A DNA stretch of 64,000 nt from Octopus sinensis (lineage: Eukaryota): NCBI RefSeq assembly GCF_006345805.1, contig NW_021832570.1, positions 1 through 64,000 on the forward strand. The letters are read 5' to 3'. The position numbers were made by a program, and so were the translations under genes. The notes beneath the pieces are model-generated. The model searched no databases. It saw only the letters and a program-made list of their open reading frames with translations, and was not told the origin of the DNA. Position 1 is the stretch's first letter, and each line of letters begins with the position of its first letter. This document shows, piece after piece, positions 4,421-45,271 of the stretch.

Positions 4421-4439
4421 CTATTTACTTTTATAAATT

Positions 4440-6920: not shown

Positions 6921-7049
6921 CAAGAAGGTGACCCACATCGACAGATTTTTCGTATAAGCCAAAGAAGTCAAGATAACTTTGGACACGTAAAAGGAATCGA
7001 TGTATGCTATGTCTTTTTTTGTCTTTTCTCAATTTTTTTATTCCGTCTT

Positions 7050-9184: not shown

Positions 9185-10200
9185 CGTCACTGGTTTTTGT
9201 CTGGACCCGGCATCTGCTCGGACCGCAAGCGTATTTTCGAATAAAAAATATAGAAAATAGTTTATTAACAGTCATAAATACATATTTATTAATTATTTTA
9301 AAAAGAATTTTACTTTGATAAAATTAAATTGGCACGTGAAAAATGGGTCTACTGGTTTTGACTAGAGATACTTTGTCAAAAATCAAAAAATACAAAGAAT
9401 ACCAGAATTTGGATGAAGTTTTGGATAAAAAGGAGAGATATAAAGTCAAACAACATGCAGAAACCTTTTCTTTTGCTGATGGAAAAGCTTATATACGAAG
9501 AAATGGCCTAAAACTACGATTTTTTTGTATTGAAGACGCAGAACTAAAATTACTAATGATTGAAGTACTGGTTGTATCATCTAAAAATAGTCCGAGCATA
9601 ATTCTAATCATTTTGGAAGAGATCGAATGATTAGTCATCTGAAGACAAGGATCTATGGTGTTAGTCGTTCTGAAATAATGCAAGTTATCAATAACTGCGT
9701 CTTTTGTCAGGTAAAAACATTAAAATTTATTTATAGTCCAAAAAATTAATGAATAACAAACGGAAATGGAAATTCGACGAAAACGACATTAAGGTTGTTT
9801 ATCACGTGTTATAATGCGGATTAAGGTGGGGGATAATGTCTATTACGGCAAGATATTGATGCTAAAAATAGACATTATCCATTATATGATCAAATTGATA
9901 CGAAAAAATATAAAGTTATTGCTAAAGAAAATATGAATTTTGATATTCAAGATGAAGAAGGATCTGTCATAAAAAGAACAAATATTGCGAGACTTTATAA
10001 AATTAATTAGTGTTTTTGTTTATAAAAAATAATTCTTAATAAGATTCTTTAGGTACTAATCAAAGAATCATTATTTTATGATTAAAGTTGGAATAGATTA
10101 GGGTTCGCCTTGTGTTAAAATAAGGGTTAGTATAGGTTGGGGATAGGGATAAGGTTAAATTTAGGTTAGCTTTTGGGATAAAGTTGAGATTTTATCACGC
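9185..10200 (+). mobile_element. Ginger-like DNA transposon derivative: integrase Zn-binding domain and C-terminal tail, catalytic core missing
   Basis: Left TIR-like CGTCACTGGTTTTTGTCTGGACC. Spliced ORF from 9343: ...KLRFFCIEDAELKLLMIE/SEHNSNHFGRDRMISHLKTRIYGVSRSEIMQVINNCVFCQ (HHCC), with introns 9565-9590 and 9711-9736. Tail IKVGDNV...YKVIAK...TNIARLYKIN*. Degenerate TTAGGG-like motifs at about 10095-10170. Right TIR not found. Confidence 0.7.
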
Positions 10201-12050: not shown

Positions 12051-13402
12051 AGAATTTTTATTTTCCTATTCGCTTGAATCGACCACTAAAGGAGAAGATA
12101 TTTTTCAAGCAATTTCTATGTTTTTTGACAGGGTTGGATTATCTTGGAATAATGTATGTTGTTGCACAACCGATGGAGCTCCAGCAATGCTTGGCTTTCA
12201 TTCTGGCTTTAGAGGCCAAGTTAGACTTGCTAACCAAGAAACGAAACATATGCATTGTATGCTACATCGATATGCACTTGCTGCAAAAACATTACCTTCA
12301 GATTTAAGATATGTTCTCGATGATGTCGTACATATAATAAATTATATTAAAAAGAGTGCTTTAAATTCGCGCATTTTCAGACTTATTTGCGAAGAATTTG
12401 AAAAGGATGGAAAGGCTTTGTTATTCCACACTGAGGTGAGATGGCTATCTTGGGGAAACTTCTTTGCCAGAGTTTTTTCTTTGAGGAATGAATTATCTGA
12501 ATATTTTATTCGCGAAAACAATTCCAAATCATCGGAATTTATTTCGAAATTAATGGATAGTTCATAGCTATCTAAACTTGCTTACTTGAGAGATGTCTTC
12601 TCTCGTATAAATTCACTCAACAAATCGCTTCAGGAAAGACATGAAACAATAATTGATTTTGTGGATAAAATTAAGTTTGTTAACTGTTTCATATTAATTA
12701 TTAGTGCTTTTTTGATGAAGTTAACACTGTGGAAAGAAAAAGTAAAACTAAATAATTTTACTAGTTTAAATCTTTTGAAGAACAATCTGTAAATATAGAT
12801 GCATTTGAAATCAAAAAAATAACCGAACTTATTTATGCACATTAACATATCTTCAACAAGAAGTAAATAAATACTTTCCAGAATTGAACGAAATTGATTT
12901 GAAATTCATTCGTACACCATTCAGTGTTGATCCACGTTTGGTCGATGAAAATATCGAAGAGGCTTATATTGACATGATCAATAATTCAAACGCAAGATTT
13001 GTATGAAAAACTTGCTTTATCAAGATTTTGGTGCGAAATGTGTAAGCATTATCCTTCCGTAAGCGCAAATGCATTAAATTTGTTGCTTATATTCCCGACA
13101 ACATATTTATGCGAACATGGCTTCTCAGCACTTCTCAATATAAAAATAATCATCGCGCAAGACTGAATATTGAAGATGACATCAGGGTTTGCTTGTCGAC
13201 AACCGAGCCTCTTATTGAAAAAATTGCCTCGAAAAAACAATATCAACCTTCTCACTAATTTTCTTTATTGATTTAATAATAAATTTTGTTTTTAGATAAG
13301 TAAAATTTTTTTGACAAAAAACTTAATAAATATGTAGGGGGTCCGCGAAATTTTTCATTTACTCACAAGGGGTCCGCAAACAAAAAAGGTTAAGAACCAC
13401 TG
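12051..13402 (+). mobile_element. hAT (Buster, ZBED5/SCAND3-like) transposase C-terminal two-thirds; right TIR present, left end deleted
   Basis: TTDGAPAMLG...HCMLHRYAL...LLFHTEVRWLS...PTTYLCEHGFSAL...KKQYQPSH*. Ends GGTTAAGAACCACTG at 13402. ACTTAAGT occurs at both 12043-12050 and 13403-13410 (TSD). 30-nt intron at 12675-12704. Confidence 0.9.
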
Positions 13403-13759
13403 ACTTAAGTAAACGCAGAATCATATTAAAAAATAAAAATACAAAGTGTCTTTATCATTGCCATCAAACGACCTACTACAAAGAGGTTGAAGAGCCAAAT
13501 GTTCACTACTATGCCATCAAACTTTAACTGAGTTAGAAAAACAGTGACTTCAGTGCATGATGAACAATGTTATTTGTAGTTAAAAACGAAATACATGGGC
13601 TTTTGTAAAAGAATTGACACTTTTATACTGTGCAAAAATCCCTTTGCGCATTTCGAAATATCTTTAATTGTCATCGAAATCTTTCTTTAAATAATGAAAA
13701 AATTTATTAGCAATTCTCGAACAAGATAACAGTTTATTATAATAAATTTTAAAAAATGT

Positions 13760-14185
13760 CGAAAAAGAAGTCATGGATTATTTGTTCGTTGGCATGCCTG
13801 GTCTAGGCTGCTTCGGATGCATGCCTCTCCCGATCTTCTGATAGTTTTCTTTTAGGGATACTGGTAATAGGGGTTCATTTGAATTAAAATATTCTTCAAT
13901 GACGATATTGCACAGTGTTTTGCAATTTTTCTCTAATAAATGTCCAAACAGTCGCCATCTAAACTCCATTTCATTTCATATTTTTTTGGCTATTGAATAT
14001 TGAGTGAGGTTCGGATTTGTCGTCTATGGAATGAGTCCAGTTTTTCTTTGCTTTTGTACCCGAGATTGTATAGTAGGATATATAACGAACCGGACAACAA
14101 AGACTGGCTTGTTTCTGTTCCGCCTGTCAGCCATACTCAGGCTCTTGGCTGAATGTATTCCCTTCTCCGCTTTTGGATACTATAG
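13760..14185 (-). mobile_element. RTE-like LINE 3' remnant
   Basis: ORF 13778-13969 begins with EFRWRLFGHLL, the RTE-type post-RT motif. Same family as 47050-47760. Confidence 0.55.
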
Positions 14186-14189
14186 TCGA

Positions 14190-14800
14190 TTCTACAATTT
14201 TACATGAAAATCAACGTTCAGCTTCGGCAATAAAGAGAAAATGGGAAAAGATGTCACAAATTTATTATTAAACAAAAGTTTAGAAAAAAGTGAGAAAACT
14301 TTGGCCTGCCAACACTTCCCTTGGAATGGAGACAAAAATATTGTTTATATTGATAGCAAACTATAAAAATCTGCTGTTGGAGTATTTTTAATGAATGATT
14401 ATGAAAGCTAAAACTGCTGTTTCATAATGTAAACAAATAAAGAAGGAATAATAATGAATGTAATAATTATTAGGTAATTACGATTATGTAATAGCATTTC
14501 AATATAAATAGAAAATATATGATAACTTACGGGAATATTTTCTAATTTATGTAATTAAAATATAATGAACATAGAAAACATATGCGATTGTATTTTTTGG
14601 AAGGCTTCACTTACGAGAAAAAGAAATTTTTCTATTTTAAAAGCCTACATTATAGCTGGGGTACAAATGATACGAAATATGATACGAAATAAAAAAATGA
14701 TACGAAATTATGAGCGAACTTTATATTCGCTCTTTAAATGACCCCATACATTAATGCATTTTCAATATGCTTAACACAATTTTTTTGATAATAAGCTATA
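14190..14800 (+). pseudogene. 3' fragment of a paralog of the Myb-domain gene at 38882-39537, plus downstream sequence
   Basis: 14190-14256 matches 39411-39477 at 64/67 nt (STILHENQRSASAIKRKWEKMS). It continues KKVRKLW, versus KKVSKYW in the intact gene, with in-frame stops. Confidence 0.75.
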
Positions 14801-16279: not shown

Positions 16280-16560
16280 AATTGCTTCGTTATTTCGAAC
16301 ATCTTTTTATTTATTTGGGCCACCATTGATCTTGCATACAACAATGGTAAAGAATTTTGCAATGACCATGTGCCCGTTTATGTGAAAAGTACAAATTAAA
16401 CATTCCGTGGACGACCAAGGGCCCTTGGTACAGGGACAGGTGGAAAGGTTGTAAGATAACATTATTCTTTAAACTAAATTCAGAGTATCAAAGATGGATT
16501 TCATCTAAAAGTACTCTGATGATGTTTTGGACGCTATTGCGATATATCAAAGCTTGTTTT
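16280..16560 (-). mobile_element. Highly degenerate LINE RT remnant
   Basis: Weak AFD / QG..L..MFNLY / YxxD-like motifs spread across frames. Confidence 0.3.
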
Positions 16561-16692
16561 GATTATAACAATACTGTCCATTCCACACAAAAAAAGTCCT
16601 TTAATCTATTATGGGCATAAAATATCCTATTGAAACATCAAGGAGGAACTAGAATCATTGTTATTTAAAAAATAAAAAAGTTAGTTACTCTA

Positions 16693-16738
16693 AAGGGGCC
16701 GCAAAAAAAATCCTGGGGGCCGCATTTGAGAACCGCTG
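16693..16738. mobile_element. Isolated hAT terminus
   Basis: GGGGCCGC subterminal repeats followed by TTTGAGAACCGCTG, which resembles the hAT ends at 13402 and 46790. Confidence 0.55.
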
Positions 16739-19612
16739 GTAAAAACATGAGTTGAGTTGCAGAATTTACAAGCTACATGTATTGGGTCCTGCAGTTTTAG
16801 GAATTCCCGTGTTCAGAGCGAATTCATCACATGGTCACTAGCCTTTTCATCAAAGGAAAATGTTTGCAGAGGAAAAAAATTACTGGCCAAGAGAGTGATG
16901 TCTCCTGTCCAATTTCGGCTGACCAGACTAGTAATGGCCGAAAAAAGAGAGGAGATTGAGATCCTTGACGTGTTTGAGTCGAAAGGCCCTAAAATGCTCT
17001 TTCTAGATGAATAGATAGGTTCAATTGTAAGAGCAAGTGGGAGTAAGTCTTTCGGGAAGGCTAGCGATCGGATGGCATTGAGGGGTTCCGGGTGGTTCGC
17101 CTTCAATAAAAAGAAAGCATCAGCTAAGGGTTTAGAACAATAACGTCTTTCATAATTGTACAGATGACTGTGCGGATTCGTGTCTGTGTTTAATAAGCAT
17201 ACTCTCAAGCGTGCTCTTCAGCATAACCGAGTGTATGTCCTAATTCCTTATTTAACTTATTAATGACTTTTAAATAACTTTTAAACAACTCCATCCCATG
17301 TTAAGACAATTTGAATAACCTTTACTTTTGGTTTACAGAGATCAATAGTTTGTTTACAAGCAGGTCTTATTTGTGAATTTTTTGCCACTTCAACTTAGTT
17401 TAAACCATCTTATAAGGTAATGCCAACTTCGATTAAATTAAGTTCTTTTTTGAGCACTGCGACCGAGATTTATTAGAAAAACCAGCTCATCACCCTTTAG
17501 TCGTTTGTTTTTGAGGAGAAATTTTTTTCACTGACAATCCAATATAACTTTGAAAGCTCGAATTTATAGATTTATATTATAGATTAAATTTTGAGCGATA
17601 GCATAATAATGAATCAGCAATAATGTATGCAGTTCAATTTCCGAAATGTAATATCCGTAACTCTAACTGCAAAGAATAGATCTAACAAAGATTCAAAAGA
17701 ACATTTATATAAATTTATTATTGTATTTATTATAAAATACTTAGACACTCACTATTTTTGATGCAGACGTACCAATGTGGCTTCTGTGGTATCTAAATGT
17801 GTTTATTGTCAGATAAATTGCCAATTTTATTAATTTCTGTCAAAACGATTGCTTGCTAATAAACCCGTAATAACGCATATTATTGCTTCTTCCCAAAGAG
17901 AACGATACTTTGTAGATCTTATCGATTTAAGACACGTTCTCCATTTAAGATACTCACTATAGATTGATATTCTGCGATACTTTTCACAAAACCTGTCATT
18001 ATATATAGAGAAAAACATTTTAGAGGAAATGTTGAAAATTCAGAAATAATGCTAAAAAATATTGAATATGTAGCGATTAACAAATATGTAGCGCTAAAAG
18101 AAACTTGAAATAAGATTATTTGAATTTATCGAGAACCTTGATAACATTGCTTGCATTAAAGTGTCCACATTGTGTGTAGAGTACTATTGAAGATATAGTT
18201 GCATAATAGAAGTTATTAGCCATCTGGAAGTCATTAAGTGAAAGTTCTGATGATTTTTATCCACTATCATCTGAGGATTTTAATGTAAAAAATATTTCAG
18301 ATGTTTCAGATAGATTTTGTATAAATTATGAGAGAAAATTTGGATCATAATGATTTTTTATTGAATTTTCGAAGAGTTAATTTTTTCCTATACGACGATT
18401 CGTTCATTCCGGACGGTGTTTTATCCTCCATCTGCTGTGGTTACCCCCTCCCCCACTGACTTTCGAGAACTTATTTTTTGAAAGCCTTTTACAAAAGGGC
18501 AACCTCCGCAGTTTGCCCAGTGATTCGACGAATCCCAGTTAACACACTTTCTATAACACTCAGCCGCAGAGTTGAACTGGTTTCGTTTGTGCGGACTCCC
18601 ACATCGTAGATAGCGCTACTGTTCCTTATAAAATCTAGAAATATGTCCAAATTTCTGACATTTGAAGCACTAGGCTTCTGGTTTTTTAAACCTTCCGAAT
18701 GAAATTTTATTAAAACCTATCTTCATTTCTAATTCTACCAGGGATTGGGCTTTGGTCTTGTTTTGCATCGTGAGTTTTGCCACCGGAAAAGGCATTCCTT
18801 ACAAACGAATAAAACTAGGAGAGATTGAACAGGATACCAGGTTGAGCAGGTCTACCAAAGCATTTTCTGTTACCCAGTAAGGCAGGTTTAGTATTATTAG
18901 TTTTTAGTTCCGCAGTGTCAAGTATTCAATTGAGTGTCCATAAAGATTTAAAAGAAGATTCCGCTCTCAATCATAAATAAAGTCGTTTATTCTCCTCTGC
19001 ATTCTTAAATAGAAGTTCATAAAGATTCATTATGGTGCTGCGAAATGGGGGCCCTCGGGGCGGTTGGAGATTCACAAATTATATTTGCGACTTTGATCAA
19101 ATCAATTGTAGCGTTATTCGAACATATAAGAATAGTTAGTAGAATATTCTAACCCAACAAACTTCTAACAACAACGTGATTCATACGAAATGGCGAATGC
19201 TTTTGAATTTGTTAGGATCGCTGACTTTGCTGAAACCTTTACCTTTAATGGCTCCGCTCTAGCCACTTGGCAAAAGCAAAGAAAAAACAAGACTCCTAAA
19301 TATCAAAAATTCACAACAATTCAAAACACATTGGATTCGTATTTGACCATTTATTCTTTCACGTTTTTCGTTTTTTTGTTACGTTTGACTCTTTGTTTAA
19401 AACACTTTAATCCGATCGATTAAATTGGAGAGAGTTAAATTGATGGTTATATATTTTAGTGGTACACTATAATAAGCGCATGCCATCAAATCTGGTTCCA
19501 ACATTAAGATTCGATTCAAAGATGACACTCCTCTCCAATATATTTTCACTGCAAAAAAGATGCATCCATTTAGGGCATAAATCAGATTGTAAACTATTGA
19601 TTAGTGTAAATA

Positions 19613-24674: not shown

Positions 24675-25819
24675 TGTCACCGTCCATCCAATAAACCACT
24701 CCGTTGAATGGACCGACTACTTTTCGTTAAAATAAAAATATAATTTTTATGAAATAAATGACGATCGAATTATTAATAAATAATATTTTTTTGAATAAAA
24801 AAATATTGCGCATTTCGGCATGGTTTTAATGAAGCTTTTTTTGCATGAAATAAACAAATTAAGGATTATTTTAATTCTGATTCGTCATCCTTTAAAGATG
24901 TTGAAAAAAAGATACAGATTGAAAAAATTTTCGAATCTGATCCGGATTAAAGGCGGAAAACTTACATTCTACAGGAAGACACTGAACGTCTTTTTTGCGA
25001 TTGAGGAATATGAGCTTAAGCTCAAGCACATTGAGGTTACCTATTGTTAAACATGGTCAGTCAGAACGTAATATGGATCACTTTGAACGAGATCGTTTAT
25101 TTGAAGATGCTTCGTAATCGTTATTACAATGTTACCCGACTCAGGCACAAAGCGATCAAAGTTGCTTTTAGATGATGGGCTAGATGCTACAATGTATTAT
25201 GTCATCACTGTTCGAGAGGATTTATACCTCCTAGAAGACGGTAAAGGAAAAATTTTAACTGAGGTACATATTTCAAGGCTGAAAAAGCTTAGCTGACTTT
25301 GATTTTGACATTTTTTGTTTTTAATGTAAATTTTTAAATTTTATTGGTTTTTAAAATTCGGGCTTTGTAAAAGCTAGGGCTTAATAGATATTTTTTTATT
25401 TAGGGTTGGCTTTTAAAATAAGTTTTAGTAAATGTTAAGGTTGTGTTTGATTGGGTTTGGTAAAAATTAACGTTAGGGTTTCATTTTTTAAAAGTTCTGT
25501 TGAATAATTTTAAATTTAAATTTGTAGTTTTTAATAAAAGTGATTTTTCTAATTTAAAAATGATTATTTTAATTGGAAAAACCCTAAAGGTAATGAAAAT
25601 GATAATTAAAATCAATAATTTTTCAAATTTAAGGTTAGGTTTGTGTTGTTCTATGTTTTATTTTTCAGAGGTTATGAAAAACATTAAAAACAACTTTAAA
25701 ATGGGACTCAAGACATATTTAGAAAAAAATAAAACATATTTTATATGGATAGAATTGATTAAAATGACATTTTTATATTGGTCCATTCAACGGCGTGATT
25801 CGTTAAGTGGACATTGACA
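24675..25819 (+). mobile_element. Non-autonomous Ginger-like DNA transposon with both ends (1,145 bp)
   Basis: 40-bp imperfect TIRs TGTCA...CCGTTGAATGGACC (24675-24714 and 25780-25819). 5-bp TSD TTCTT (24670-24674 and 25820-25824). Internal remnant FFAIEEYELKLKHIE/SERNMDHFERDR with a 25-nt intron at 25036-25060, and tail YYVITV...EVHISRLKKLS*. Confidence 0.85.
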
Positions 25820-26210
25820 TTCTTTTAAAATATTTTATTTGGGTTGAGCCTTATAGAGATGTCAGTTCTTTTAGCAACCTTCCGTAAAAAATTCTCTCCA
25901 ATTATTTAATAACAGTAGATTGCAAACCTTCACCATACCCAATAGAAAGAGCGATATTAAACGTTCTCTCAAGGAAAAGTTCAATCTTTATTAGTTTCAA
26001 TTTTTCTTCTTTGTTGTGGACTTTTCTTTATACAAATTCCCTGATACTGGAGTTAAAGAATAATCATCTATTTAAGTTTTTTGAAAAAACAAAAATAAAG
26101 AAAATTGTTCCATTTCCTATTCAACAAAATTGACTTAGGTCAATTTATAAAAGTTTAAAATGTGTTAATTTTTATCCTAGAAACACAATTTGAAAAAATC
26201 AAATAATTAT

Positions 26211-29200
26211 TGTGACCGGTTTTATTTTGGACCAGGTTTTATTTTGGACCGATCGCAAATTTTTTTAATTTTGTTGACGAAAAGGCATATTTTGTAAAGA
26301 ATAACAAAAATCTTCGTTTTTTTGTTCGGAAGAGAGAGAACTTAAGCTAAAAACTATCAAAGTAAGATAATATATTGAATTTAAAGCTATTACATAATGA
26401 AAATCATTTTGGGCGTGATCGGATGTTAAGCCTATTAAGAAATAAAATTTACAGCGTCAAACGTTCTGAAATCTTCAATGTAATTAAATCATGTGTTGAG
26501 TGCCTTTTTGTTACTAATAAGAAAACGTAACTTTAACTTAAATTTGGATTTTAGTGTTAGGGTTAAAATTTTGTTTAGGGTTAAGGAAAAAATGTTTAGG
26601 GTTAGGGTTAAAAATTTGTTTAGGGTTAAGGTTAAAATGTTTAGGGTTAGTGTTAGGGTTAAAATTTTGTTTAGGGTTAAGGAAAAAATGTTTAGGATAA
26701 GGGTTAAAATGTTTAGGGTCAAGGAGAAAATGTTTAGGGTTAGGGTTAAAAATTTGTTTAGGGTTAAGGTTAAAATGTTTAGGGTTAGTGTTAGGGTTAA
26801 AATTTGTTTAGGGTTAAGGTTAAAATGTTTAGGGTTAGTGTTAGGGTTAAAATTTTGTTTAGGGTTAAGGAAAAAATGTTTAGGGTTAGGGTTAAAAATT
26901 TGTTTAGGGTTAAGGTTAAAATGTTTAGGGTTAGTGTTAGGGTTAAAATTTTGTTTAGGGTTAAGGAAAAAATGTTTAGGATAAGGGTTAAAATGTTTAG
27001 GGTCAAGGAGAAAATGTTTAGGGTTAGGGTTAAAAATTTGTTTAGGGTTAAGGTTAAAATGTTTAGAATTAGTGTTAGGATTAAAATTTTGTTTAGGGTT
27101 AAAGAAAAAATGTCTAGGGTTAGGGTTAAAAGTTTGTTTAGGGTTAGTGTTAGGATTAAAATTTTGTTTAGGGTTAAAGAAAAAATGTTTAGGGTTAGGG
27201 TTAAAAATTTGTTTAGGGTTAAGGTTAAAATGTTTAGGGTTAGTGTTAGGATTAAAATTTTGTTTAGGGTTAAAGAAAAAATGTTTAGGGTTAGGGTTAA
27301 AAATTTGTTTAGGGTTAAGGTTAAAATGTTTAGGGTTAGTGTTAGGGTTAAAATTTTGTTTAGGGTTAAGGAAAAAATGTTTAGGATAAGGGTTAAAATG
27401 TTTAGGGTCAAGGAGAAAATGTTTAGGGTTAGGGTTAAAAATTTGTTTAGGGTTAAGGTTAAAATGTTTAGGGTTAGTGTTAGGATTAAAATTTTGTTTA
27501 GGGTTAAAGAAAAAATGTTTAGGGTTAGGGTTAAAAATTTGTTTAGGGTTAAGGTTAAAATGTTTAGGGTTAGTGTTAGGATTAAAATTTTGTTTAGGGT
27601 TAAAGAAAAATGTTTAGGGTTAGGGGTTAAATTTTGTTTAGGTTAAGGTTAAAATGTTTAGGGTTGTGTTAGGATTAAAATTTTGTTTAGGGTTAAAGAA
27701 AAATGTTTAGGGTTAGGTTAAAAATTTGTTTAGGGTTAAGGTTAAAATGTTTAGGGTTAGTGTTTAGGGTTAAAATTTTGTTTAGGGTTAAAGAAAAAAT
27801 GTTTAGGGTTAGGGTAAAAATTTGTTTAGGGTTAAGGTTAAAATGTTTAGGTTAGTGTTAGGGTATAAAATTTTGTTTAGGGTTAAGGAAAAAATGTTTA
27901 GGGTTAGGGTTAAAAATTTGTTTAGGGTTAAGGTTAAAATGTTTGGGTTAGTGTTAGGGTAAAATTTTGTTTAGGGTTAGGAAAAAATGTTTAGGATAAG
28001 GGTTAAAATGTTTAGGGTCAAGGAGAAAATGTTTAGGGTTAGGGTTAAAAATTTGTTTAGGGTTAAGGTTAAAATGTTTAGGGTTAGTGTTAGGGTTAAA
28101 ATTTGTTTAGGGTTAAGGTTAAAATGTTTAGGGTTAGTGTTAGGGTTAAAATTTTGTTTAGGGTTAAAGAAAAAATGTTTAGGGTTAGGGTTAAAAATTT
28201 GTTTAGGGTTAAGGTTAAAATGTTTAGGGTTAGTGTTAGGGTTAAAATTTTGTTTAGGGTTAAGGAAAAAATGTTTAGGGTTAGGGTTAAAAATTTGTTT
28301 AGGGTTAAGGTTAAAATGTTTAGGGTTAGTGTTAGGGTTAAAATTTTGTTTAGGGTTAAGGAAAAAATGTTTAGGGTTAGGGTTAAAAATTGTTTAGGGT
28401 TAAGGTAAAATGTTTAGGGTTAGTGTTAGGGTTAAAATTTGTTTAGGGTTAAGGTTAAAATGTTTAGGGTTAGTGTTAGGGTTAAAATTTTGTTTAGGGT
28501 TAAAGAAAAAATGTTTAGGGTTAGGGTTAAAAATTTGTTTAGGGTTAAGGTTAAAATGTTTAGGGTTAGTGTAAGGATTAAAATTTTGTTTAGGGTTAAG
28601 GAAAAAATGTTTAGGATAAGGGTTAAAATGTTTAGGGTCAAGGAAAAATGTTTAGGGTTAGGGTTAAAATTTTGTTTAGGGTAAGGTTAAAATGTTTAGG
28701 GTTAGTGTTAGGGTTAAAATTTGTTTAGGGTTAAGGTTAAAATGTTTAGGGTTAGTGTTAGGGTTAAAATTTTGTTTAGGGTTAGGAAAAAATGTTTAGG
28801 GTTAGGGTTATTAAAAATTTGTTTAGGGTTAAGGTTAAAATGTTTGGGTTAGTGTTAGGGTTAAAATTTTGTTTAGGGTTAAGGAAAAAATGTTTAGGAT
28901 AAGGGTTAAAATGTTTAGGGTCAAGGAGAAAATGTTTAGGGTTAGGGTTAAAAATTTGTTTAGGGTTAAGGTTAAAATGTTTAGGGTTAGTGTTAGGATT
29001 AAAATTTTGTTTAGGGTTAAAGAAAAAATGTTTAGGGTTAGGGTTAAAAATTTGTTTAGGGTTAAGGTTAAAATGTTTAGGGTTAGTGTAAGGATTAAAA
29101 TTTTGTTTAGGGTTAAAGAAAAAATGTTTAGGGTTAGGGTTAAAAATTTGTTTAGGGTTAAGGTTAAAATGTTTAGGGTTAGTGTTAGGATTAAAATTTT

Positions 29201-32200
29201 GTTTAGGGTTAAAGAAAAAATGTTTAGGGTTAGAATTAAAAATTTGTTTAGGGTTAAGGTTAAAATGTTTAGGGTTAGTGTTAGGGTTAAAATTTTGTTT
29301 AGGGTTAAGGAAAAAATGTTTAGGATAAAGGTTAAAATGTTTAGGGTCAAGGAGAAAATGTTTAGGGTTAGGGTTAAAAATTTGTTTAGGGTTAAGGTTA
29401 AAATGTTTAGGGTTAGTGTTAGGATTAAAATTTTGTTTAGGGTTAAGGAAAAAATGTTAGGGTTAGGGTAAAATTTGTTTAGGGTTAAGGTTAAAATGTT
29501 TAGGGTTAGTGTTAGGATTAAAATTTTGTTTAGGGTTAAAGAAAAAATGTTTAGGGTTAGGTTAAAATTTGTTTAGGGTTAAGGTTAAAATGTTTAGGGT
29601 TAGTGTTAGGATTAAAATTTTGTTTAGGGTTAAAGAAAAAATGTTTAGGGTTAGGGTTAAAAATTGTTTAGGGTTAGGTTAAAATGTTTAGGGTTAGTGT
29701 TAGGGTTAAAATTTGTTTAGGGTTAAAGAAAAAATGTTTAGGGTTAGGGTTAAAAATTTGTTTAGGGTTAAGGTTAAAATGTTTAGGGTTAGTGTTATGG
29801 TTAAAATTTTGTTTAGGGTTAAGGAAAAAATGTTTAGGGTTAGGGTTAAAAATTTGTTTAGGGTTAAGGTTAAAATGTTTAGGGTTAGGTTAGGGTTAAA
29901 AATTTGTTTAGGGTTAAGGAAAAAATGTTTAGGATAAGGGTTAAAATGTTAGGGTCAAGGAGAAAATGTTAGGGTTAGGGTTAAAAATTTGTTAGGGTTA
30001 AGGTTAAAATGTTTAGGGTTAGTGTTAGGGTTAAAATTTGTTTAGGGTTAAGGTTAAAATGTTTAGGGTTAGTGTTAGGGTTAAAATTTTGTTTAGGGTT
30101 AAAGAAAAAATGTTTAGGGTTAGGGTTAAAAATTTGTTTAGGGTTAAGGTTAAAATGTTTAGGGTTAGTGTTAGGGTTAAAATTTTGTTTAGGGTTAAGG
30201 AAAAAATGTTTAGGGTTAGGGTTAAAAATTTGTTTAGGGTTAAGGTTAAAATGTTTAGGGTTAGTGTTAGGGTTAAAATTTTGTTTAGGGTTAAGGAAAA
30301 AATGTTTAGGGTTAGGGTTAAAAATTTGTTTAGGGTTAAGGTTAAAATGTTTAGGGTTAGTGTTAGGGTTAAAATTTGTTTAGGGTTAAGGTTAAAATGT
30401 TTAGGGTTAGTGTTAGGGTTAAAATTTTGTTTAGGGTTAAAGAAAAAATGTTTAGGGTTAGGGTTAAAAATTTGTTTAGGGTTAAGGTTAAAATGTTTAG
30501 GGTTAGTGTTAGGGTTAAAATTTTGTTTAGGGTTAAGGAAAAAATGTTTAGGATAAGGGTTAAAATGTTTAGGGTCAAGGAGAAAATGTTTAGGGTTAGG
30601 GTTAAAAATTTGTTTAGGGTTAAGGTTAAAATGTTTAGGGTTAGTGTTAGGGTTAAAATTTGTTTAGGGTTAAGGTTAAAATGTTTAGGGTTAGTGTTAG
30701 GGTTAAAATTTGTTTAGGGTTAAGAAAAAATGTTTAGGGTTAGGGTTAAAAATTTGTTTAGGGTTAAGGTTAAAATGTTTAGGGTTAGTGTTAGGGTTAA
30801 AATTTTGTTTAGGGTAAAGAAAAAATGTTTAGGGTTAGGGTTAAAAATTTGTTTAGGGTTAAGGTTAAAATGTTTAGGGTTAGTGTTAGGGTTAAAATTT
30901 TGTTTAGGGTTAAGGAAAAAATGTTAGGGTTAGGGTTAAAAATTTGTTTAGGGTTAAGGTTAAAATGTTTAGGGTTAGTGTTAGGTTAAAAATTTGTTTA
31001 GGGTTAAGGTTAAATGTTTAGGGTTAGTGTTAGGGTTAAAATTTTGTTTAGGGTTAAGAAAAAATGTTTAGGGTTAGGGTTAAAAATTTGTTTAGGGTTA
31101 AGGTTAAAATGTTTAGGGTTAGTGTTAGGGTTAAAATTTTGTTTAGGGTTAAGGAAAAAATGTTTAGGGTTAGGGTTAAAATTTGTTTAGGGTTAGGTTA
31201 AAATGTTTAGGGTTAGTGTTAGGGTTAAAATTTTGTTTAGGGTAAGGAAAAAATGTTTAGGGTTAGGGTTAAAAATTTGTTTAGGGTTAAGGTTAAAATG
31301 TTTAGGGTTAGTGTTAGGGTTAAAATTTGTTTAGGGTTAAGGTTAAAATGTTTAGGGTTAGTGTTAGGGTTAAAATTTTGTTGAGGGTTAAAGAAAAAAT
31401 GTTTAGGGTTAGGGTTAAAAATTTGTTTAGGGTTAAGGTTAAAATGTTTAGGGTTAGTGTTAGGGTTAAAATTTTGTTTAGGGTTAAAGAAAAAATGTTT
31501 AGGGTTAGGGTTAAAAATTTGTTTAGGGTTAAGGTTAAAATGTTTAGGGTTAGTGTTAGGGTTAAAATTTTGTTTAGGGTTAAGGAAAAAATGTTTAGGG
31601 TTAGGGTTAAAAATTTGTTTAGGTTAAGGTTAAAATGTTTAGGGTTAGTGTTAGGTTAAAAATTTGTTTAGGGTTAAGGTTAAAATGTTTAGGGTTAGTG
31701 TTAGGGTTAAAATTTTGTTTAGGGTTAAAGAAAAAATGTTTAGGGTTAGGGTTAAAATTTGTTTAGGGTTAGGTTAAAATGTTTAGGGTTAGTGTTAGGG
31801 TTAAAATTTTGTTTAGGGTTAAAGAAAAAATGTTTAGGGTTAGGGTTAAAAATTTGTTTAGGGTTAAGGTTAAAATGTTTAGGGTTAGTGTTAGGGTTAA
31901 AATTTTGTTTAGGGTTAAGGAAAAAATGTTTAGGGTTAGGGTTAAAAATTTGTTTAGGGTTAAGGTTAAAATGTTTAGGGTTAGTGTTAGGGTTAAAATT
32001 TGTTTAGGGTTAAGGTTAAAATGTTTAGGGTTAGTGTTAGGGTTAAAATTTTGTTTAGGGTTAAAGAAAAAATGTTTAGGGTTAGGGTTAAAAATTTGTT
32101 TAGGGTTAAGGTTAAAATGTTTAGGGTTAGTGTTAGGGTTAAAATTTTGTTTAGGGTTGAGGAAAAAATGTTTAGGATAAGGGTTAAAATGTTTAGGGTC

Positions 32201-33249
32201 AAGGAGAAAATGTTTAGGGTTAGGGTTAAAAATTTGTTTAGGGTAAGGTTAAAAGTTTAGGGTTAGTGTTAGGGTTAAAATTTTGTTTAGGGTTAGGAAA
32301 AAATGTTTAGGGTTAGGGTTAAAATTTGTTTAGGGTTAAGGTAAAATGTTTAGGGTTAGTGTTAGGGTTAAAATTTGTTTAGGGTTAAGGTTAAAATGTT
32401 TAGGGTTAGTGTTAGGGTTAAAATTTTGTTTAGGGTTAAAGAAAAAATGTTTAGGGTTAGGGTTAAAAATTTGTTTAGGGTTAAGGTTAAAATGTTTAGG
32501 GTTAGTGTTAGGGTTAAAATTTTGTTTAGGGTTAAGGAAAAAATGTTTAGGGTTAGGGTTAAAAATTTGTTTAGGGTTAAGGTTAAAATATTTAGGGTTA
32601 GTGTTAGGGTTAAAATTTTGTTTAGGGTTAAGGAAAAAATGTTTAGTGTTAGGGTTAAAAATTTGTTTAGGGTCAAGGTTAAAATGTTTAGGGTTAGGGT
32701 TAAAATTTTGTTTAGGGTTAAGGAGAAAATGTTTAGGATAAGGGTTAAAATGTTTAGGGTCAAGGAGAAAATGTTCAGGGTTAAGGTTGAAATTTTGTTA
32801 GTTGAGATTAAGATTTTTATAATTAAAATTAAATTAAGTTTTTTACCGTTTGGACAACTATTAAAAATAGGGGTTTTAAAATCAAATTAAAAATTAGGGT
32901 GTTTTAGAATTAGGATTTTGGGTGTTAGGGCTATTATTAGAATGTATATGTGTTAGGGTTATATTTTTAAAATTTTTAATTAATAGAATTATATTTAGTT
33001 TTTAATTTTTTTAGAATGGAAGACCAATTTTTAAATAAATATCGTAACGGCAACGCTGTAATCATCAAATTTGTTGATTGGTTGCTTTGTGCATACTTCC
33101 ATTTTTTAAAAAACTAAATGAAATCAAGAAAAAACTATACAAAAGTATAATTTAACATTAACTCATATATTTTTAGTGGAATAAAATTTTTATTATTGAT
33201 TTTTTTCTCGGTCCAAAATAAAACCTGGTCCAAAATAAAACCTGTGACA
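26211..33249 (+). mobile_element. Ginger-like DNA transposon (7,039 bp) whose interior is a telomere-like satellite
   Basis: 42-bp TIRs matching at 40/42 (26211-26252 and 33208-33249), TGT...ACA ends. TSD ATTAT (26206-26210 and 33250-33254). HHCC remnant ELKLKTIK/LLHNENHFGRDRMLSLLRNKIYSVKRSEIFNVIKSCVEC with a 25-nt intron at 26362-26386. Confidence 0.9.
26551..32790 (+). repeat. TTAGGG-based complex satellite, ~96-bp monomer (30+21+24+21-bp subunits), ~6.2 kb
   Basis: The monomer carries six TTAGGG, each in TTAGGGTTA context, separated by A/T tracts. A 42-bp variant block (TTTAGGATAAGGG...GGGTCAAGGAGAAAATG) recurs about 11 times. Single orientation throughout. Confidence 0.97.
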
Positions 33250-33804
33250 ATTATTATATTACACTTTTAAAAATGTCATTTATTTATATAATATGAATAT
33301 GTGCATCTTAACTGCAAAAACAAAGATAATCACAACCAATTTCTAAAACAACCTTAATTGTTGAAGGCCTATTTAATATGTCGCGAGCGCAGCGAGCGAC
33401 CGAGCGCTAGACGCGACTTTTACATCTAACAAGCCTGTCATCAACAAATATATTTATTAAATGATTTAAAATTTTAACATTATTTAAAATTAAAATTGAT
33501 ATCCATTTGGCCATAAGGCCATTAATAGATAACTATTAAATTACTAGTAAAAAAAGCTAATCAATGCCACAATATTTTAATTAATTTGTCCCATATCTCA
33601 GTAAACGTTTGATTCTGCTCTTATATTAGAATAAACGTTTTTTCTATATTCACCGTTTGTGACAGATACCTTCTATTCACGATCGACTGACCACTTAAGT
33701 CAACGTATAATCATACTAAATAAAAAAAGCACTTAGTTTTTTTATCATTGTCATCAAGGGACTAAAAGGAGGTTAAAGAGCCCTTTAAATCACTTTAAAC
33801 ACTT

Positions 33805-38881: not shown

Positions 38882-39537
38882 ATGTCTGTTCAGGTTTATT
38901 CCAAGTGTATTTTGGAAATATTAAAATTATTACTCCAAAATTCTGATTCCAACAAGGAAATTAAAACAGTTAGAATTCTCAAACATCAATTAAATAGGTT
39001 TTTGAATATATGACAAATCAACTCACTGAGTCTGACCTTCTGGTTCTTTTATCCTTATATCACATTCTAGAAAGAACTTCCTCTAAATGAAGATACTGTT
39101 CATTGCCGACTTACATCAGCTCCGTAAGTTAACTTTGATTATCTTAAAGAGATTGTAAATTAGACGAAATTGTAGCTCTTATTAACAGTTATTATGGCTA
39201 TGATATTTTAAAAGACCGGAATATTAGACAAACTTTAGAAAGTTCAGATTTGTTAAAAATTAATTTCAAATCGGAAAAGGAAACTGATTATTTTTCTGCA
39301 GTAAATAGTTCCACAGATTGTATTAAGTCAAATCGACTTTTATGGTCTATAAAAGAAGAAGCGACATTGTTGGATGCTGTCAAGATTTATGGAAAGGATT
39401 TTGACTATATTTCTACAATTTTACGTGAGAATCAACGTTCAGCTTCGGCAATAAAGAGAAAGTGGGAAAAGATGTCATGTGACAAAAAGTTGTTCAAAAA
39501 AGTTAGTAAATATTGGAGAATTCATTTCAAAAAATAA
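38882..39537 (+). CDS. Small protein (~190 aa) with a single C-terminal Myb/SANT domain
   Basis: An open spliced frame results from ATG 38882 with GT-AG introns 38969-38997, 39043-39070 and 39124-39149. C-terminal WSIKEEATLLDAVKIYGKDFDYISTILRENQRSASAIKRKWEKM. The true start may lie further upstream. Confidence 0.75.
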
Positions 39538-40947: not shown

Positions 40948-41895
40948 CAGGAGTGTCAAACATGGGGCCCTCAAAAGACATAAGTGTAATCCTCAGCGTA
41001 CTTTGGCAAACATAAGTGCGGTCTGATTTAATACAAAAAATTAATTTTTATTTTTTTTATATTTAATTAAAATTTTTAATGATAATAGAATTAAAATGAA
41101 ACAATTCGTTATCTACAATTTGTATTTAATTGTATTGTATTTTTAAATCGTGTTTGTCAATGTCTCGTACTTTTTCTGGACTAAAATAGAAACGGTGCTT
41201 GAAAGATGAACGGAGAGTGTTTCAAGATAAATGGGAATTTCTCTATTTTTGCACAAGGGTTGATGGAAAAATACATTGTTTGATATATAACAAGTTTATC
41301 GCTATACCGAAAGAATACAACCCAATGAGGCATTATCAATCTAATCATCTATCATACAATTATTTCGAACGTATTAAATTGCTTATTAACCAAGAAGGTC
41401 CAATTCGCGTTTCAAAGCTAAATGAATTGCGAAAAAATTTATCTGCGTTACAGGCTCATTTCACAAAAAGTCATAACCAATGTACTGCATTAGTCACTGC
41501 AAGGTATGAAATCAGCACAATGCCTGCAGTAAATGGAACTTCAAAAAGTTTGCAACAAAAATCATTGCTATGTTTGGTTCGACATATAGTGAACAGCTTT
41601 TTTCATTTATGAAATTGACAAAAACTGCTCAAAGAACAAGACTAACTGATAAACATTTATCCTCTTTAATACAAGTCGGAACTACACGAATAGGTCAGCC
41701 TGACATCAAAAATTGTATCTAAAAAAAGATGTCAATCCTCTGGAAGCAGTTTTCACCAAAATTAAAGGACGATGATTGAATAATTTAGTTTCTCTTATTT
41801 GGTTATTCATCATAATAAATATCATAATTAATCTTCCCTTAATGAGAAATTATTATAAATGCGGCCTTCGAAGCGAAATGAGTTTGACACCCCTG
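40948..41895 (+). mobile_element. Internally deleted hAT (SPIN/GTF2IRD2-like), 948 bp
   Basis: TIR CAGG(A/G)GTGTCAAAC. Perfect TSD CTGTAGAG (40940-40947 and 41896-41903). The N-terminal zinc-finger ORF 41199-41612 is fused to a dimerization-domain remnant (MKLTKTAQRTRLTDKHL). Confidence 0.92.
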
Positions 41896-43914: not shown

Positions 43915-45271
43915 CTACCATAATTGATTTTCATGATCTTTCGCGGGAACTTCAATGACTCTTACACTATCCTCTATCCTCGCTGTACGGTTCCCCTTCT
44001 GAACCACTCCAATAATCCACGCCTGGTACCCTTCCTGCCTTTGAAGATCCTTACAAAAACTCGCCGCTTGTTGTTGTGGTAAAATTATCAAAAGCCCACC
44101 TAAAAACAATAAAATTTCAAAAACAAAAAAACCCGAAGTTTCAGGACAACGACCACTCAACAGCGGAAAAGGACTCCCACACGATTTATTAAACGAGTGT
44201 AATTTAGCAATAACAGGAATGTTGTAAATCAAAAAGGAGACTTGATTGGTCTGGCAACGTGCCAAATTCTCCGCATGGCCTAAAAGACCATAACCCGTCA
44301 CATCTGTTGCCCCATGTGAATTATAACGTTTCATTAGAATTGAAGCTAACATTTACCCAATTAATAAAACCTTCTCGATTAAGTCTTGTCATTGAGTCAA
44401 TTGCACGTTTATAAGCTTTAATCACATCACTTTGACGGGCTACACTCTTGAGTTTACTCCACTTGTCAGGCCGATTGAGCCACAAGTACATATTTATAGC
44501 CAATTGGGTTCCCAGAGGTTTCGTAAGAACCAACACGTCTCCCTCTACTGCACTTGTTGGCCTAAAATAAATAACAAAAATAACATTAAATAGTCTTTAC
44601 ATATCGAACTTGCAACACCTCCAATGACCATCCAAGGATTAAAAGTAACACTTCCACCCGAAATTTCAATTCCCGCCAATTTAGCTTGATCCTATATAAT
44701 ATTACGTAATCTAAAAGCCACTCTAAATCCACTACGAATCAAATCCACCACAATACTCCTCTCAGCCCCAACAAGTCCTGTACTGACACCCAAAATCATT
44801 TTCAAACAGTCACAATTAGAGACTCCCAAAGCGTAGAGATCGCTGAGGACATTAGAACATGCTATTCTCCCCTAAAAGTTATAAACGACCAAAATAATAC
44901 CATTTTGTAAGGATCGTCAATATTTGGGTAGAAAAAATCAGTAGTTTGTATTAGACTGAGACCTCCGTACCGCAAGGGGACAATACTGCAGTCAATTCCT
45001 TGAATATATAATGTAAGTTACCCATTAAGGATCTGGAAGAATTTAGATCCATGGGGATGTTCGGCTTCTGTCCCTCCAGTAGTCTGAGCAGGACTGACTG
45101 GGGGACTTTGCACCCTCATCCCTTTAGTTCGGTGTATTTTGTGAGAGCAAAATCTCTACGTAAGCCGTATTTCGTTGGGTCGAAACCGACTTCTTGTTTA
45201 TCCTAAAATGATGATATTATATTTAAAATATATGTTTTATTAAAGGTTGAAAAATAACACGGCACAACCAT
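43915..45271 (-). CDS. SEPHS2: Selenophosphate synthetase 2 (selenoprotein, UGA-Sec)
   Basis: FDPTKYGL...[16 protein letters not shown] (TGA at 45116-45118), [62 protein letters not shown]. Introns at 44999-45021, 44872-44900, 44692-44721, 44562-44584, 44346-44370 and 44100-44132. The first intron (45203-45268) and the start codon are tentative. Confidence 0.93.

What the first reader, a model, noticed from the sequence alone, without database searches (positions are those of the whole stretch)
26211..33249. A DNA transposon carrying a 6.2-kb telomere-like satellite
The TTAGGG array is enclosed by 42-bp TIRs and a 5-bp TSD (ATTAT) and follows an intron-containing integrase Zn-finger remnant. 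It is therefore cargo of, or grew inside, a Ginger-like element, and is not a chromosome end or fusion scar. Each 96-bp monomer gives six TTAGGGTTA sites, matching the YTAGGGTTR site bound by TRF-type Myb domains. That amounts to several hundred sites. Hypothesis: a mobile family that seeds interstitial telomere-like blocks and may recruit or titrate telomere proteins, mask itself from silencing, or mark breakage/healing sites. I know of no described system with exactly this layout, but I cannot search the literature.
Basis: partly seen in the sequence, partly recalled or inferred. Interest (0 to 1): 0.9.

Follow-up and report, generated by a model that had tools for sequence, protein, structure and literature searches.

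The report
Telomere-like satellite grown inside a transposon
A defective cut-and-paste transposon of the Ginger2 type, most likely in the genome of a dicyemid parasite of octopus, has had a short TTAGGG-like patch near its 3' end expand into a 6.2-kb satellite. This is a clean new example of a known way that satellites arise, not a chromosome end, and nothing yet shows a telomere-related function.

Summary
42-bp inverted ends (40/42 matching) at 26211-26252 and 33208-33249, flanked by ATTAT on both sides, enclose a 25-nt intron, an integrase H2C2 zinc-finger remnant, and a 6.25-kb array (26551-32801). The array has four subunits (24+21+30+21 = 96 bp) and about 325 YTAGGGTTR sites, all on one strand.

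The closest full-length relatives are integrase-only proteins of about 430 aa. In a tree they fall inside the Ginger2/Tdd clade, so "Ginger-like" holds.

Two older, internally deleted copies of the same family lie in this window, at about 9.2-10.2 kb and 24.9-25.65 kb. Each carries a degenerate TTAGGGTT-rich patch just after the integrase stop codon. The array is therefore best read as an expansion of a patch native to the family, not captured cargo or a telomere scar.

The host is not an octopus. All conserved genes here have 25-33-nt introns, which points to a dicyemid parasite.

No other array-bearing copy could be searched for. Mobility of the array, telomere-protein binding and the host's telomere repeat all remain untested. 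Satellites arising inside transposons are well known, so interest is moderate.

The parts
26206..26210 (.). Left target-site duplication, ATTAT
   Evidence: Identical 5-mer directly outside both ends.
26211..26252 (+). Left terminal inverted repeat: TGTGAC plus two 17-bp GGTTTTATTTTGGACC subrepeats
   Evidence: 40/42 match to the right end. The subrepeat is found only in the two ends. The GGTC-N13-GGTC-N-GTSAC architecture occurs 3 times in the window against 0 expected.
26277..26361 (+). Remnant of the first coding exon (tail of the N-terminal module: DEKAYFVKNNKNLRFF...ELKLKTIK). It has a frameshift and no start codon.
   Evidence: Frame translations. DNA alignment with copy 2 and copy 1. 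63.6% identity over 231 nt to 9466-9691.
26362..26386 (+). 25-nt GT-AG mini-intron
   Evidence: Same position and length (25-26 nt) in copies 1, 2 and 3. Its removal restores colinearity with intronless homologues P0001, P0002 and P0003.
26387..26527 (+). H2C2 zinc-finger exon remnant of the integrase/transposase (LLHNENHFGRDRML...SCVEC). The DDE core that should follow is deleted.
   Evidence: Pfam PF17921 30.6 bits; alignment A2/A3.
26551..32801 (+). Telomere-like satellite. 96-bp unit = D(24)+A(21)+B(30)+C(21), with 138-bp (DABCEF) and 147-bp (DABABC) variants. About 65 units, each subunit holding 1-2 TTAGGGTTA.
   Evidence: TRF; subunit census and order; about 2% divergence from six subunit prototypes; motif counts.
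32802..32990 (+). Decayed, non-amplified TTAGGGTT-like patch at the 3' edge of the array. Includes GTGTTAGGGTTATATTTTT, which resembles the B subunit.
   Evidence: Sequence. 4 TTAGGGTT (up to 1 mismatch) hits in 300 bp, top 0.1% of background windows. Weak alignment to the copy-1 patch (61% over 246 nt).
32991..33207 (+). 3' subterminal unique sequence of the element
   Evidence: Lies between the patch and the right end. No similarity elsewhere in the window.
33208..33249 (-). Right terminal inverted repeat (ends ...CCTGTGACA)
33250..33254 (.). Right target-site duplication, ATTAT
9185..10180 (+). Copy 2 of the family, an older internally deleted relic. Left TIR-like end 9185-9226; exon 1 9343-9564; 26-nt intron 9565-9590; H2C2 exon 9591-9710; DDE core missing; C-terminal remnant about 9745-10010 (stop at 10008-10010); TTAGGGTT-like patch about 10095-10180. 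No right end found.
   Evidence: Sequence and frames; Pfam H2C2 28.2 bits; end architecture match at 9186-9224; phmmer colinearity with 430-aa integrases; patch density.
24898..25650 (+). Copy 1 of the family, a more degraded relic 560 bp upstream of the main element. Exon-1 remnant about 24898-25035; 25-nt intron 25036-25060; zinc-finger stub 25061-25114; C-terminal remnant 25129-25296 (stop); TTAGGGTT-like patch about 25370-25650. No ends found.
   Evidence: It holds the highest TTAGGGTT-like density of any non-array window (5 hits per 300 bp).

Best explanation
The feature is one non-autonomous (internally deleted, pseudogenised) copy of a cut-and-paste DNA transposon whose transposase is a retroviral-type integrase of the Ginger2/Tdd lineage. 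It inserted at an AT-rich site and duplicated 5 bp (ATTAT). Elements of this family natively carry a short, degenerate cluster of TTAGGGTT-like motifs spaced about 20-30 bp apart, between the transposase stop codon and the 3' end. In this copy the DDE core was lost. That native cluster was then amplified in place, by replication slippage and unequal exchange, into a 6.25-kb higher-order satellite. Shown: the ends, the TSD, the zinc-finger remnant, the array anatomy, the family patch in two other copies, and the phylogenetic placement of the closest full-length relatives. Inferred: the order of events, the amplification mechanism, and that no function is needed to explain the array.
For: (1) Single-element boundaries: 40/42 TIRs plus identical 5-bp flanks. 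(2) The internal order is that of one element: 5' end, N-terminal exon remnant, conserved 25-nt intron, H2C2 exon, [array], decayed patch, 3' end. The array is on the same strand as the ORF. (3) Copies 2 and 1 show the arrangement ORF stop followed by a TTAGGGTT-like patch on the same strand. Every non-array 300-bp window with 3 or more TTAGGGTT (up to 1 mismatch) hits lies in these two patches. (4) The array is built of 21-30-bp subunits sharing the core TGTTTAGGGTTA. 199 of 253 subunits are exact copies of nine variants, divergence is about 2%, and the higher-order patterns vary (DABC, DABCEF, DABABC), as expected from recent unequal exchange. (5) Family identity: the spliced N-terminus plus zinc finger is colinear from residue 3 with 430-434-aa proteins carrying H2C2 and rve domains. 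These proteins form a clade (99/94) nested in Ginger2/Tdd (95/81) in a tree with the reference set of Bao et al. 2010, and their best BLASTP hits are always Ginger2. One relative is named 'SCAN domain-containing protein 3' by NCBI, and SCAND3 is reported to be Ginger2-derived (PMC3575427, abstract). TGTNR termini, a roughly 45-bp TIR and a 5-bp TSD fit the published Ginger2/Tdd description. (6) A second, unrelated satellite in this genome (95-bp unit, next to a PIF1-helicase element) has 13.8 units here and about 6.8 in a 97-99% identical copy elsewhere. (7) TE-to-satellite conversion is well documented (PMC6947457).
Against: No second copy with both ends is available to show the pre-expansion state. 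Copies 1 and 2 lack a detectable right end, so placing their patches inside the element is by analogy. Patch-to-patch similarity is mostly at motif level (about 61% alignments). The TTAGGGTT motif has persisted in three copies that are only about 60-65% identical, which hints at constraint (a function for the element) rather than neutrality. The assembly of a 6-kb array cannot be verified without reads. Placement in Ginger2 rests on full-length relatives that are only 39-44% identical to a 114-aa window fragment.
Confidence: 0.7

Rival explanations
1. One reading: array-bearing elements are themselves mobile and seed interstitial telomere-like blocks, which bind TRF-type Myb telomere proteins (titration, silencing escape, or breakage and healing sites).
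For: Ends and TSD are intact enough for mobilisation in trans. There are about 325 consensus YTAGGGTTR sites in one orientation. The motif cluster is retained in three diverged copies. Dicyemids are reported to undergo somatic chromatin elimination and to form circular DNA (PMC6543705).
Against: No other array-bearing copy was found or could be searched for. The host's telomere repeat and telomere proteins are unknown. There are never more than two perfect hexamers in a row, and AT-rich spacers separate them. The only Myb ORF nearby is a generic SANT/Myb domain, not TRF-like.
Confidence: 0.1
2. The TTAGGGTT cluster is a working cis-element of the transposon itself, for example a binding platform for a host factor or the transposase, or a 3' processing signal. 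The array would be an over-amplified version of that element.
For: The same motif, strand and position after the stop codon occur in three copies that are otherwise about 60-65% identical.
Against: Relatives from other organisms (L004, L005, L006, L007) have no TTAGGGTT near the gene. The obvious transposase-binding candidates are the 17-bp subrepeats in the ends. There is no experimental handle.
Confidence: 0.1
3. The enclosure is not a single element. Either two separate element ends happen to flank a pre-existing satellite, or the contig is misassembled across the array.
For: Long satellites are error-prone in assemblies. Copy 1, a relic of the same family, lies only 560 bp upstream, so this is a local cluster of family fragments.
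Against: The 5-bp flanks match. The 5' and 3' internal parts are in the right order and orientation for one element. The array's strand and motif match the family's native patch. The array shows ordered higher-order variation rather than a collapsed consensus.
Confidence: 0.07
4. An interstitial telomeric sequence left by a chromosome fusion or by telomerase-mediated break repair.
For: TTAGGG content and strict strand polarity.
Against: There is no (TTAGGG)n tract longer than two units. The 96-bp higher-order unit has A/T-rich linkers. The array is bounded by TIRs and a TSD. Ordinary genes and transposons extend for 26-30 kb on both sides.
Confidence: 0.02

Closest known systems
Ginger2/Tdd DNA transposons (Bao, Kapitonov & Jurka 2010, PMC2836005)
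   Same: Integrase-type transposase with an H2C2 zinc finger and DDE core and no GPY/F motif. TGTNR termini, TIRs of tens of bp, a short TSD (5 bp, as in TDD-4/5) and an AT-rich target. The closest full-length relatives nest in the Ginger2/Tdd clade.
   Different: The relatives form their own subclade, sister to the described metazoan and fungal Ginger2. They keep an N-terminal G-x-[YF]-P...DG-x-[LF]-YY module that aligns with the Ginger1 YPYY region, a motif the paper reports as absent from Ginger2. The TSD is 5 bp, not the 4 bp of metazoan Ginger2. The window copy has no DDE core and carries a satellite, which has not been described for Ginger elements in the papers I read.
Satellites born from internal repeats of transposons (oyster and other bivalve MITE-like elements such as HindIII and BIV160, Xenopus Xstir, Drosophila Helitron CTRs; table in PMC6947457; see also PMC5139131, PMC8268682)
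   Same: A tandem array lies between the ends of a non-autonomous DNA transposon. Its unit derives from a short internal repeat of the element, and it expands by unequal exchange.
   Different: The repeat unit is made of telomere-hexamer-like cores. The carrier is an integrase-type (Ginger2-like) element. The host appears to be a dicyemid.
Clustered, degenerate interstitial telomeric sequences (review PMC9498494)
   Same: Non-terminal, head-to-tail, degenerate telomere-like motifs interspersed with linker sequence, forming part of a longer repeat.
   Different: Here the origin is traceable to a transposon's own 3' region rather than to a fusion, break repair or subtelomere relocation. No long perfect tracts.
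Telomere-associated retroelements that carry telomeric repeats (Penelope-like Athena/Coprina, Drosophila HeT-A/TART). This comparison is from my own knowledge, not tested here.
   Same: Mobile elements physically linked to telomere-type repeats.
   Different: Those are retroelements that target or build chromosome ends by reverse transcription. This is a cut-and-paste element at an internal site with an internal array.

Membership tests
Ginger2/Tdd DNA transposon | Transposase with an N-terminal H2C2 zinc finger of integrase type | tested here: met
   PF17921 scores 30.6 bits on the window remnant 26375-26530 and 28.2 bits on copy 2. H and C columns are invariant in alignment A3.
Ginger2/Tdd DNA transposon | DDE (rve) catalytic core | tested here: inconclusive
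   Absent from all three window copies, which are internal deletions. Present in the colinear full-length relatives P0001, P0002, P0018, P0021 and P0029 (PF00665, 46-60 bits). This is expected for non-autonomous copies, but no autonomous copy from this genome was seen.
Ginger2/Tdd DNA transposon | Integrase groups with Ginger2/TDD-4/5 rather than with Ginger1, Gypsy, BEL or Copia | tested here: met
   ML tree with reference sequences from PMC2836005 Additional file 1. The relatives form a clade (99/94) inside Ginger2+TDD (95/81), and Ginger1 is separate (97/91). Top BLASTP hits are all Ginger2. This applies to the relatives; the window holds only the N-terminus and zinc finger.
Ginger2/Tdd DNA transposon | Termini follow TGTNR; TIRs about 45-300 bp | tested here: met
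   TGTGA and TGTCA; 42-bp TIR, against the paper's description. Relative L007 has TGTTG...CCACA with TIRs of about 400 bp.
Ginger2/Tdd DNA transposon | Short TSD (4 bp in metazoan Ginger2, 5 bp in TDD-4/5); AT-rich RTATAY target | tested here: inconclusive
   5-bp ATTAT matches the TDD-4/5 length, not the metazoan 4 bp. The target is AT-rich but is not a clean RTATAY. Only one insertion is available.
Ginger2/Tdd DNA transposon | Lacks the GPY/F motif | tested here: met
   No GP[YF] in eight full-length relatives.
Ginger2/Tdd DNA transposon | Lacks the YPYY N-terminal motif (as stated by Bao et al.) | tested here: not met
   The N-terminal module of P0002 aligns colinearly with the YPYY region and zinc finger of Ginger1-5_HM (E 3e-9). 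The G-x-[YF]-P and DG-x-[LF]-YY signatures are present in several relatives. The family is therefore an atypical Ginger2-related lineage.
Ginger1 DNA transposon | CCGG/CCGT-specific 4-bp TSD; GPY/F motif; C-terminal OTU or Ulp1 protease; Ginger1 clade | tested here: not met
   TSD is ATTAT. No GPY/F. Relatives have only H2C2 and rve domains. They lie outside the Ginger1 clade.
LTR retrotransposon (Gypsy) integrase remnant | Direct long terminal repeats; RT and RNase H upstream of the integrase | tested here: not met
   The ends are inverted, not direct. The ORF starts with the integrase N-terminus in copy 2 and in the 430-aa relatives.
Transposon-borne (TE-derived) satellite | Array lies within one element's ends, and its unit is related to a non-amplified internal sequence of other family copies | tested here: met
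   The relation is at motif and spacing level, not a clean unit-for-unit alignment.
Transposon-borne (TE-derived) satellite | Different copies of the element carry different numbers of units | not testable with these tools
   The host genome is in none of the searchable DNA collections. The satellite ORF found no protein hits. The expected behaviour was seen only for the unrelated 95-bp satellite.
True telomere or fusion-type interstitial telomeric sequence | Long perfect (TTAGGG)n tract at a chromosome end or fusion point | tested here: not met
   At most two consecutive hexamers (0 occurrences of three). The array is embedded in 64 kb of genes and transposons.

The most novel reading that the evidence does not exclude
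In dicyemids, which are reported to eliminate chromatin and form circular DNA in somatic cells, transposon-bounded telomere-like arrays such as this one could act in programmed genome rearrangement. They might serve as excision units released as circles, or as internal sites where breaks are healed into new telomeres. The integrase-type transposon family would then be the source of the signals.
Probability: 0.04. Interest if true: 0.85.

Novelty: new member of a known kind. Interest (0 to 1): 0.42.

Why it matters
This locus documents both ends of a transposon-to-satellite transition in one 64-kb window: the unexpanded state (short degenerate patches in two old copies) and the expanded state (a 6.2-kb homogenised array). 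The carrier is a transposon superfamily (Ginger2/Tdd) for which the papers I read report no such cargo.

It also indicates that a distinct Ginger2-related lineage, with a compact transposase of about 430 aa that keeps a YPYY-like N-terminus, exists in a dicyemid and has relatives in microsporidia and marine metagenomes.

If the host's telomere repeat is TTAGGG, roughly 325 consensus TRF-type sites at an internal locus would make a natural test bed for telomere-protein titration or fragile-site behaviour. That remains a hypothesis.

A practical point: a contig filed under an Octopus sinensis assembly shares 97-99% identical repeats with this window and is probably parasite DNA.

Tried and rejected
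(1) I looked up ten window ORFs by exact sequence to identify the genome. None is in the protein collection.

(2) I searched the 280-aa ORF that runs through the satellite to find other arrays in public assemblies. Nothing scored among 3951 candidates.

(3) I scanned for the 33-nt TIR core and the 30-nt B subunit in JGI metagenome contigs, prokaryote genome contigs and viral contigs. There were no matches. These collections are unlikely to hold the host genome, so this says nothing about copy number in the host.

(4) I joined the two flanks with a single ATTAT and searched the window and fetched loci for a paralogous empty site. None was found.

(5) I searched for the right ends of copies 1 and 2 by BLAST and by the GGTC-N13-GGTC-N-GTSAC signature. 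Only the left end of copy 2 was found.

(6) I first took the host to be Octopus because of a 98% match to an O. sinensis assembly contig. I rejected this after finding 25-33-nt introns in MCM6 and SEPHS and no MCM6 hit above 71% identity.

(7) I fetched contigs of distant relatives (L002-L008) to look for TTAGGG patches. None has one. L007 gave clear ends of about 400 bp but an odd 15-bp flanking repeat.

(8) An Rfam scan of the whole window found no RNA family.

(9) I tested whether the second satellite (56864-58181) has inverted ends. It does not.

(10) I checked whether the Myb ORF at 39148-39534 is TRF-like. It gives only weak SANT-type matches.
Full report

Yes. The sequence at 26211-26252 and the reverse complement of 33208-33249 match at 40 of 42 positions. 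The two mismatches are at positions 4 and 7 of the terminus (TGTGACC vs TGTCACA). Each end consists of TGTSAC followed by two 17-bp subrepeats. The 16-mer GGTTTTATTTTGGACC occurs four times in the window, only there, against 0.14 expected. The five bases outside each end are ATTAT.

Between the ends, Tandem Repeats Finder reports one array at 26551-32801: period 96, 66 copies, 83% matches. It contains 344 TTAGGG and 321 TTAGGGTTA, all on the + strand, and never three perfect hexamers in a row. YTAGGGTTR occurs 328 times in the window against 2.6 expected.

The array is a structured satellite. It has four subunits sharing the core TGTTTAGGGTTA:
- D, 24 bp
- A, 21 bp
- B, 30 bp
- C, 21 bp

Together these make the 96-bp unit. 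Longer variants are DABCEF (138 bp) and DABABC (147 bp). 199 of 253 subunits are exact copies of nine variants, and divergence from six prototypes is about 2%. So the array is young or actively homogenised.

The mean is about 4.9.

**2. What lies at the ends of the array?**

Left of the array, ORF 26375-26530 matches Pfam Integrase_H2C2 above the curated cut-off (30.6 vs 25.5 bits). Upstream of it lies a 25-nt GT-AG segment (26362-26386), and before that a remnant of an N-terminal exon with a frameshift. The coding sequence stops a few codons after the CxxC motif, and the catalytic core is missing.

Right of the array is a decayed stretch of TTAGGGTT-like motifs (32802-32990), about 200 bp of unique sequence, and then the right end.

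**3. Two more copies in the window change the reading.**

A self-comparison found that 26264-26487 resembles 9466-9691 (63.6% over 231 nt).

Copy 2 (about 9185-10180) has these parts:
- A left end with the same architecture. The pattern GGTC-N13-GGTC-N-GTSAC occurs only at the two ends of the main element and at 9186-9224, against 0 expected.
- An ORF with a start codon (9343-9564).
- A 26-nt GT-AG segment at the same position as in the main element.
- An H2C2 exon (28.2 bits).
- No catalytic core.
- A C-terminal remnant ending in a stop at 10008-10010.
- About 90 bp further on, a patch of TTAGGGTT-like motifs.

Copy 1 (about 24898-25650), only 560 bp upstream of the main element, has the same order in a more degraded form. 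It ends with a C-terminal remnant (25129-25296, stop) followed by a patch at 25370-25650.

I counted TTAGGGTT with up to one mismatch in 300-bp windows. Every non-array window in the 64 kb with three or more hits lies in one of these two patches, on the ORF strand.

The TTAGGGTT cluster after the stop codon is therefore native to the family. The 6.2-kb array occupies exactly that position and strand. This favours "grew inside" over "captured cargo". A telomere scar is excluded separately, by the absence of any perfect tract longer than two hexamers and by the TIR/TSD boundaries.

**4. Which transposon family?**

I searched the spliced N-terminus plus zinc finger of copy 2 (114 aa) against 1.84 billion representative proteins. 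The best hits were proteins of 430 and 434 aa, colinear from residue 3 (E about 1e-13, 39-44% identity). Their only Pfam domains are H2C2 and the rve integrase core, followed by a C-terminal region that the window's C-terminal remnants resemble.

I built a maximum-likelihood tree using the integrase sequences in Additional file 1 of Bao et al. 2010:
- Ten of these relatives form a clade (99/94).
- That clade is nested within Ginger2 plus TDD-4/5 (95/81) and is sister to the described metazoan and fungal Ginger2 (93/88).
- Ginger1 is separate (97/91).

BLASTP top hits are always Ginger2. One relative is named "SCAN domain-containing protein 3" in a microsporidian genome, and SCAND3 is reported to be Ginger2-derived (PMC3575427).

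The published Ginger2/Tdd features are TGTNR termini, TIRs of 45-297 bp, a 5-bp TSD in TDD-4/5 (4 bp in metazoan Ginger2), an AT-rich target, and H2C2 plus DDE without GPY/F. The window element fits these (TGTGA/TGTCA, 42 bp, ATTAT), and none of eight relatives has a GP[YF] motif.

One feature departs. The family keeps an N-terminal module that aligns with the YPYY region of Ginger1-5_HM (E 3e-9), which the paper says Ginger2 lacks. I therefore call it a Ginger2-related lineage with an atypical N-terminus. This placement rests on relatives, because all three window copies have lost the core.

**5. The host is probably a dicyemid, not an octopus.**

One hit (P0007) is an annotated chimeric protein on contig VCDQ01009780.1 of the Octopus sinensis assembly GCA_006345805.1. 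That contig shares several repeats with the window at 95-99% identity.

The conserved genes in the window, however, have ultra-short GT-AG introns:
- Six in an MCM6 gene, of 25-28 nt.
- Two in a selenophosphate synthetase gene, of 25 and 33 nt.
- The 25-26-nt introns of the transposon copies.

The spliced MCM6 (518 aa) has no hit above 71% identity. Its best hits are spread evenly over vertebrates, molluscs and brachiopods, and there is no near-identical octopus protein.

According to the literature held here, introns under 30 nt occur among animals only in myxobolid myxozoans and Dicyema japonicum (PMC13644364). The median intron length in Dicyema is 27 bp (PMC6543705). D. japonicum lives in the renal sac of Octopus sinensis and has a 67.5-Mb genome with 49% repeats (PMC6736024).

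The most economical reading is that the window, and that "octopus" contig, are dicyemid DNA. This is an inference. I found nothing on the dicyemid telomere repeat, so the telomere-mimicry idea lacks its premise for now.

**6. Mechanism.**

The most likely history has four steps:
1. A Ginger2-type element with a native 3' TTAGGGTT minisatellite inserted here, producing the TSD.
2. It lost its core by internal deletion. All three copies have different deletion breakpoints, the usual fate of cut-and-paste elements.
3. Its minisatellite expanded by slippage and unequal exchange into a higher-order array.
4. Homogenisation continued, which explains the low subunit divergence.

The order of steps 1-3 cannot be fixed. 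Expansion could have preceded the insertion, in which case the array was carried here.

An unrelated 95-bp satellite next to a PIF1-helicase (Helitron-like) element has 13.8 units in the window and about 6.8 in a 97-99% identical copy on the other contig.

**7. What is not shown.**

- No second array-bearing copy, no empty site and no reads were available.
- Whether telomere proteins bind is untested.
- The TTAGGGTT motif persists in three copies that are otherwise only about 60-65% identical. That is the one observation hinting the patch does something for the element, and I list this as a rival.
- Dicyemids are reported to eliminate chromatin and make circular DNA in somatic cells, so a role of such arrays in programmed rearrangement is the most novel reading not excluded. 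I give it about 4%.

**8. Verdict.**

The structural interpretation (inside a Ginger-like transposon, not a chromosome end) is supported and sharpened. The functional hypothesis is untested.

Satellites arising inside transposons are a known kind of event (PMC6947457), and clustered degenerate telomere-like repeats inside longer repeats are also known (PMC9498494). This is a well-resolved new member of that kind, in an unusual host and an unusual transposon lineage. Interest is moderate.

Noticed in passing
window 1654-3364 (+) and 43918-44596 (-): MCM6 and selenophosphate synthetase genes have GT-AG introns of only 25-33 nt (eight measured). Together with MCM6 hits of at most 71% identity to any animal, this points to a dicyemid genome rather than an octopus.
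   Followed up: yes
L001 (contig VCDQ01009780.1 of Octopus sinensis assembly GCA_006345805.1), 6637-14214 and 16514-16845: This contig, filed as octopus, shares several repeat families with the window at 95-99% identity. It is probably parasite (dicyemid) DNA in the host assembly. Its annotated protein P0007 is a chimera of a Tc1-like HTH and an unspliced fragment of the Ginger2-like element.
   Followed up: partly
window 55095-58377; L001 11716-14214: A 95-bp satellite (56864-58181, 13.8 units, 96% matches) sits next to a PIF1-like helicase ORF (55233-55983, minus strand; Helitron-like). A 97-99% identical copy on L001 has only about 6.8 units. No inverted ends were found around it.
   Followed up: partly
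window 39148-39534 (+): An ORF with a Myb/SANT domain (PF00249, 26 bits) lies about 6 kb downstream of the element. PDB matches are weak and of the RCOR1-SANT2/SNAPC4 type, not TRF-type. It is unclear whether it is a host exon or part of a transposon.
   Followed up: partly
L007 2775-5425 (ENA metagenome contig, 24% GC): A relative of the integrase family has nearly perfect inverted ends of about 400 bp (TGTTG...CCACA), flanked by a 15-bp direct repeat AGATTTAAGATTTAT. That is far longer than any Ginger TSD. Its ORF is interrupted by a small palindromic-ended insertion (about 3351-3790).
   Followed up: no
proteins P0009, P0010/P0182, P0013, P0037, P0047: The closest named relatives of this integrase family are in microsporidia (Dictyocoela, Enteropsectra, Pancytospora). 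Others come from marine metagenomes. A family shared by unrelated intracellular or renal parasites may indicate horizontal transfer.
   Followed up: no
window about 3355-3375 (+): The MCM6 reading frame shifts by one base between ...ACRLI and ...[10 protein letters not shown] with no room for an intron. This is a sequencing or assembly indel, or a real frameshift.
   Followed up: no
window 4000-7060 (-), 59100-60040 (+), 62160-63660 (+), 12049-13260 (+), 41190-41720 (+): Several non-LTR retrotransposon fragments (endonuclease and RT-like ORFs) and hAT/ZBED-like fragments fill much of the window. This matches the published repeat-rich (49%) dicyemid genome.
   Followed up: no
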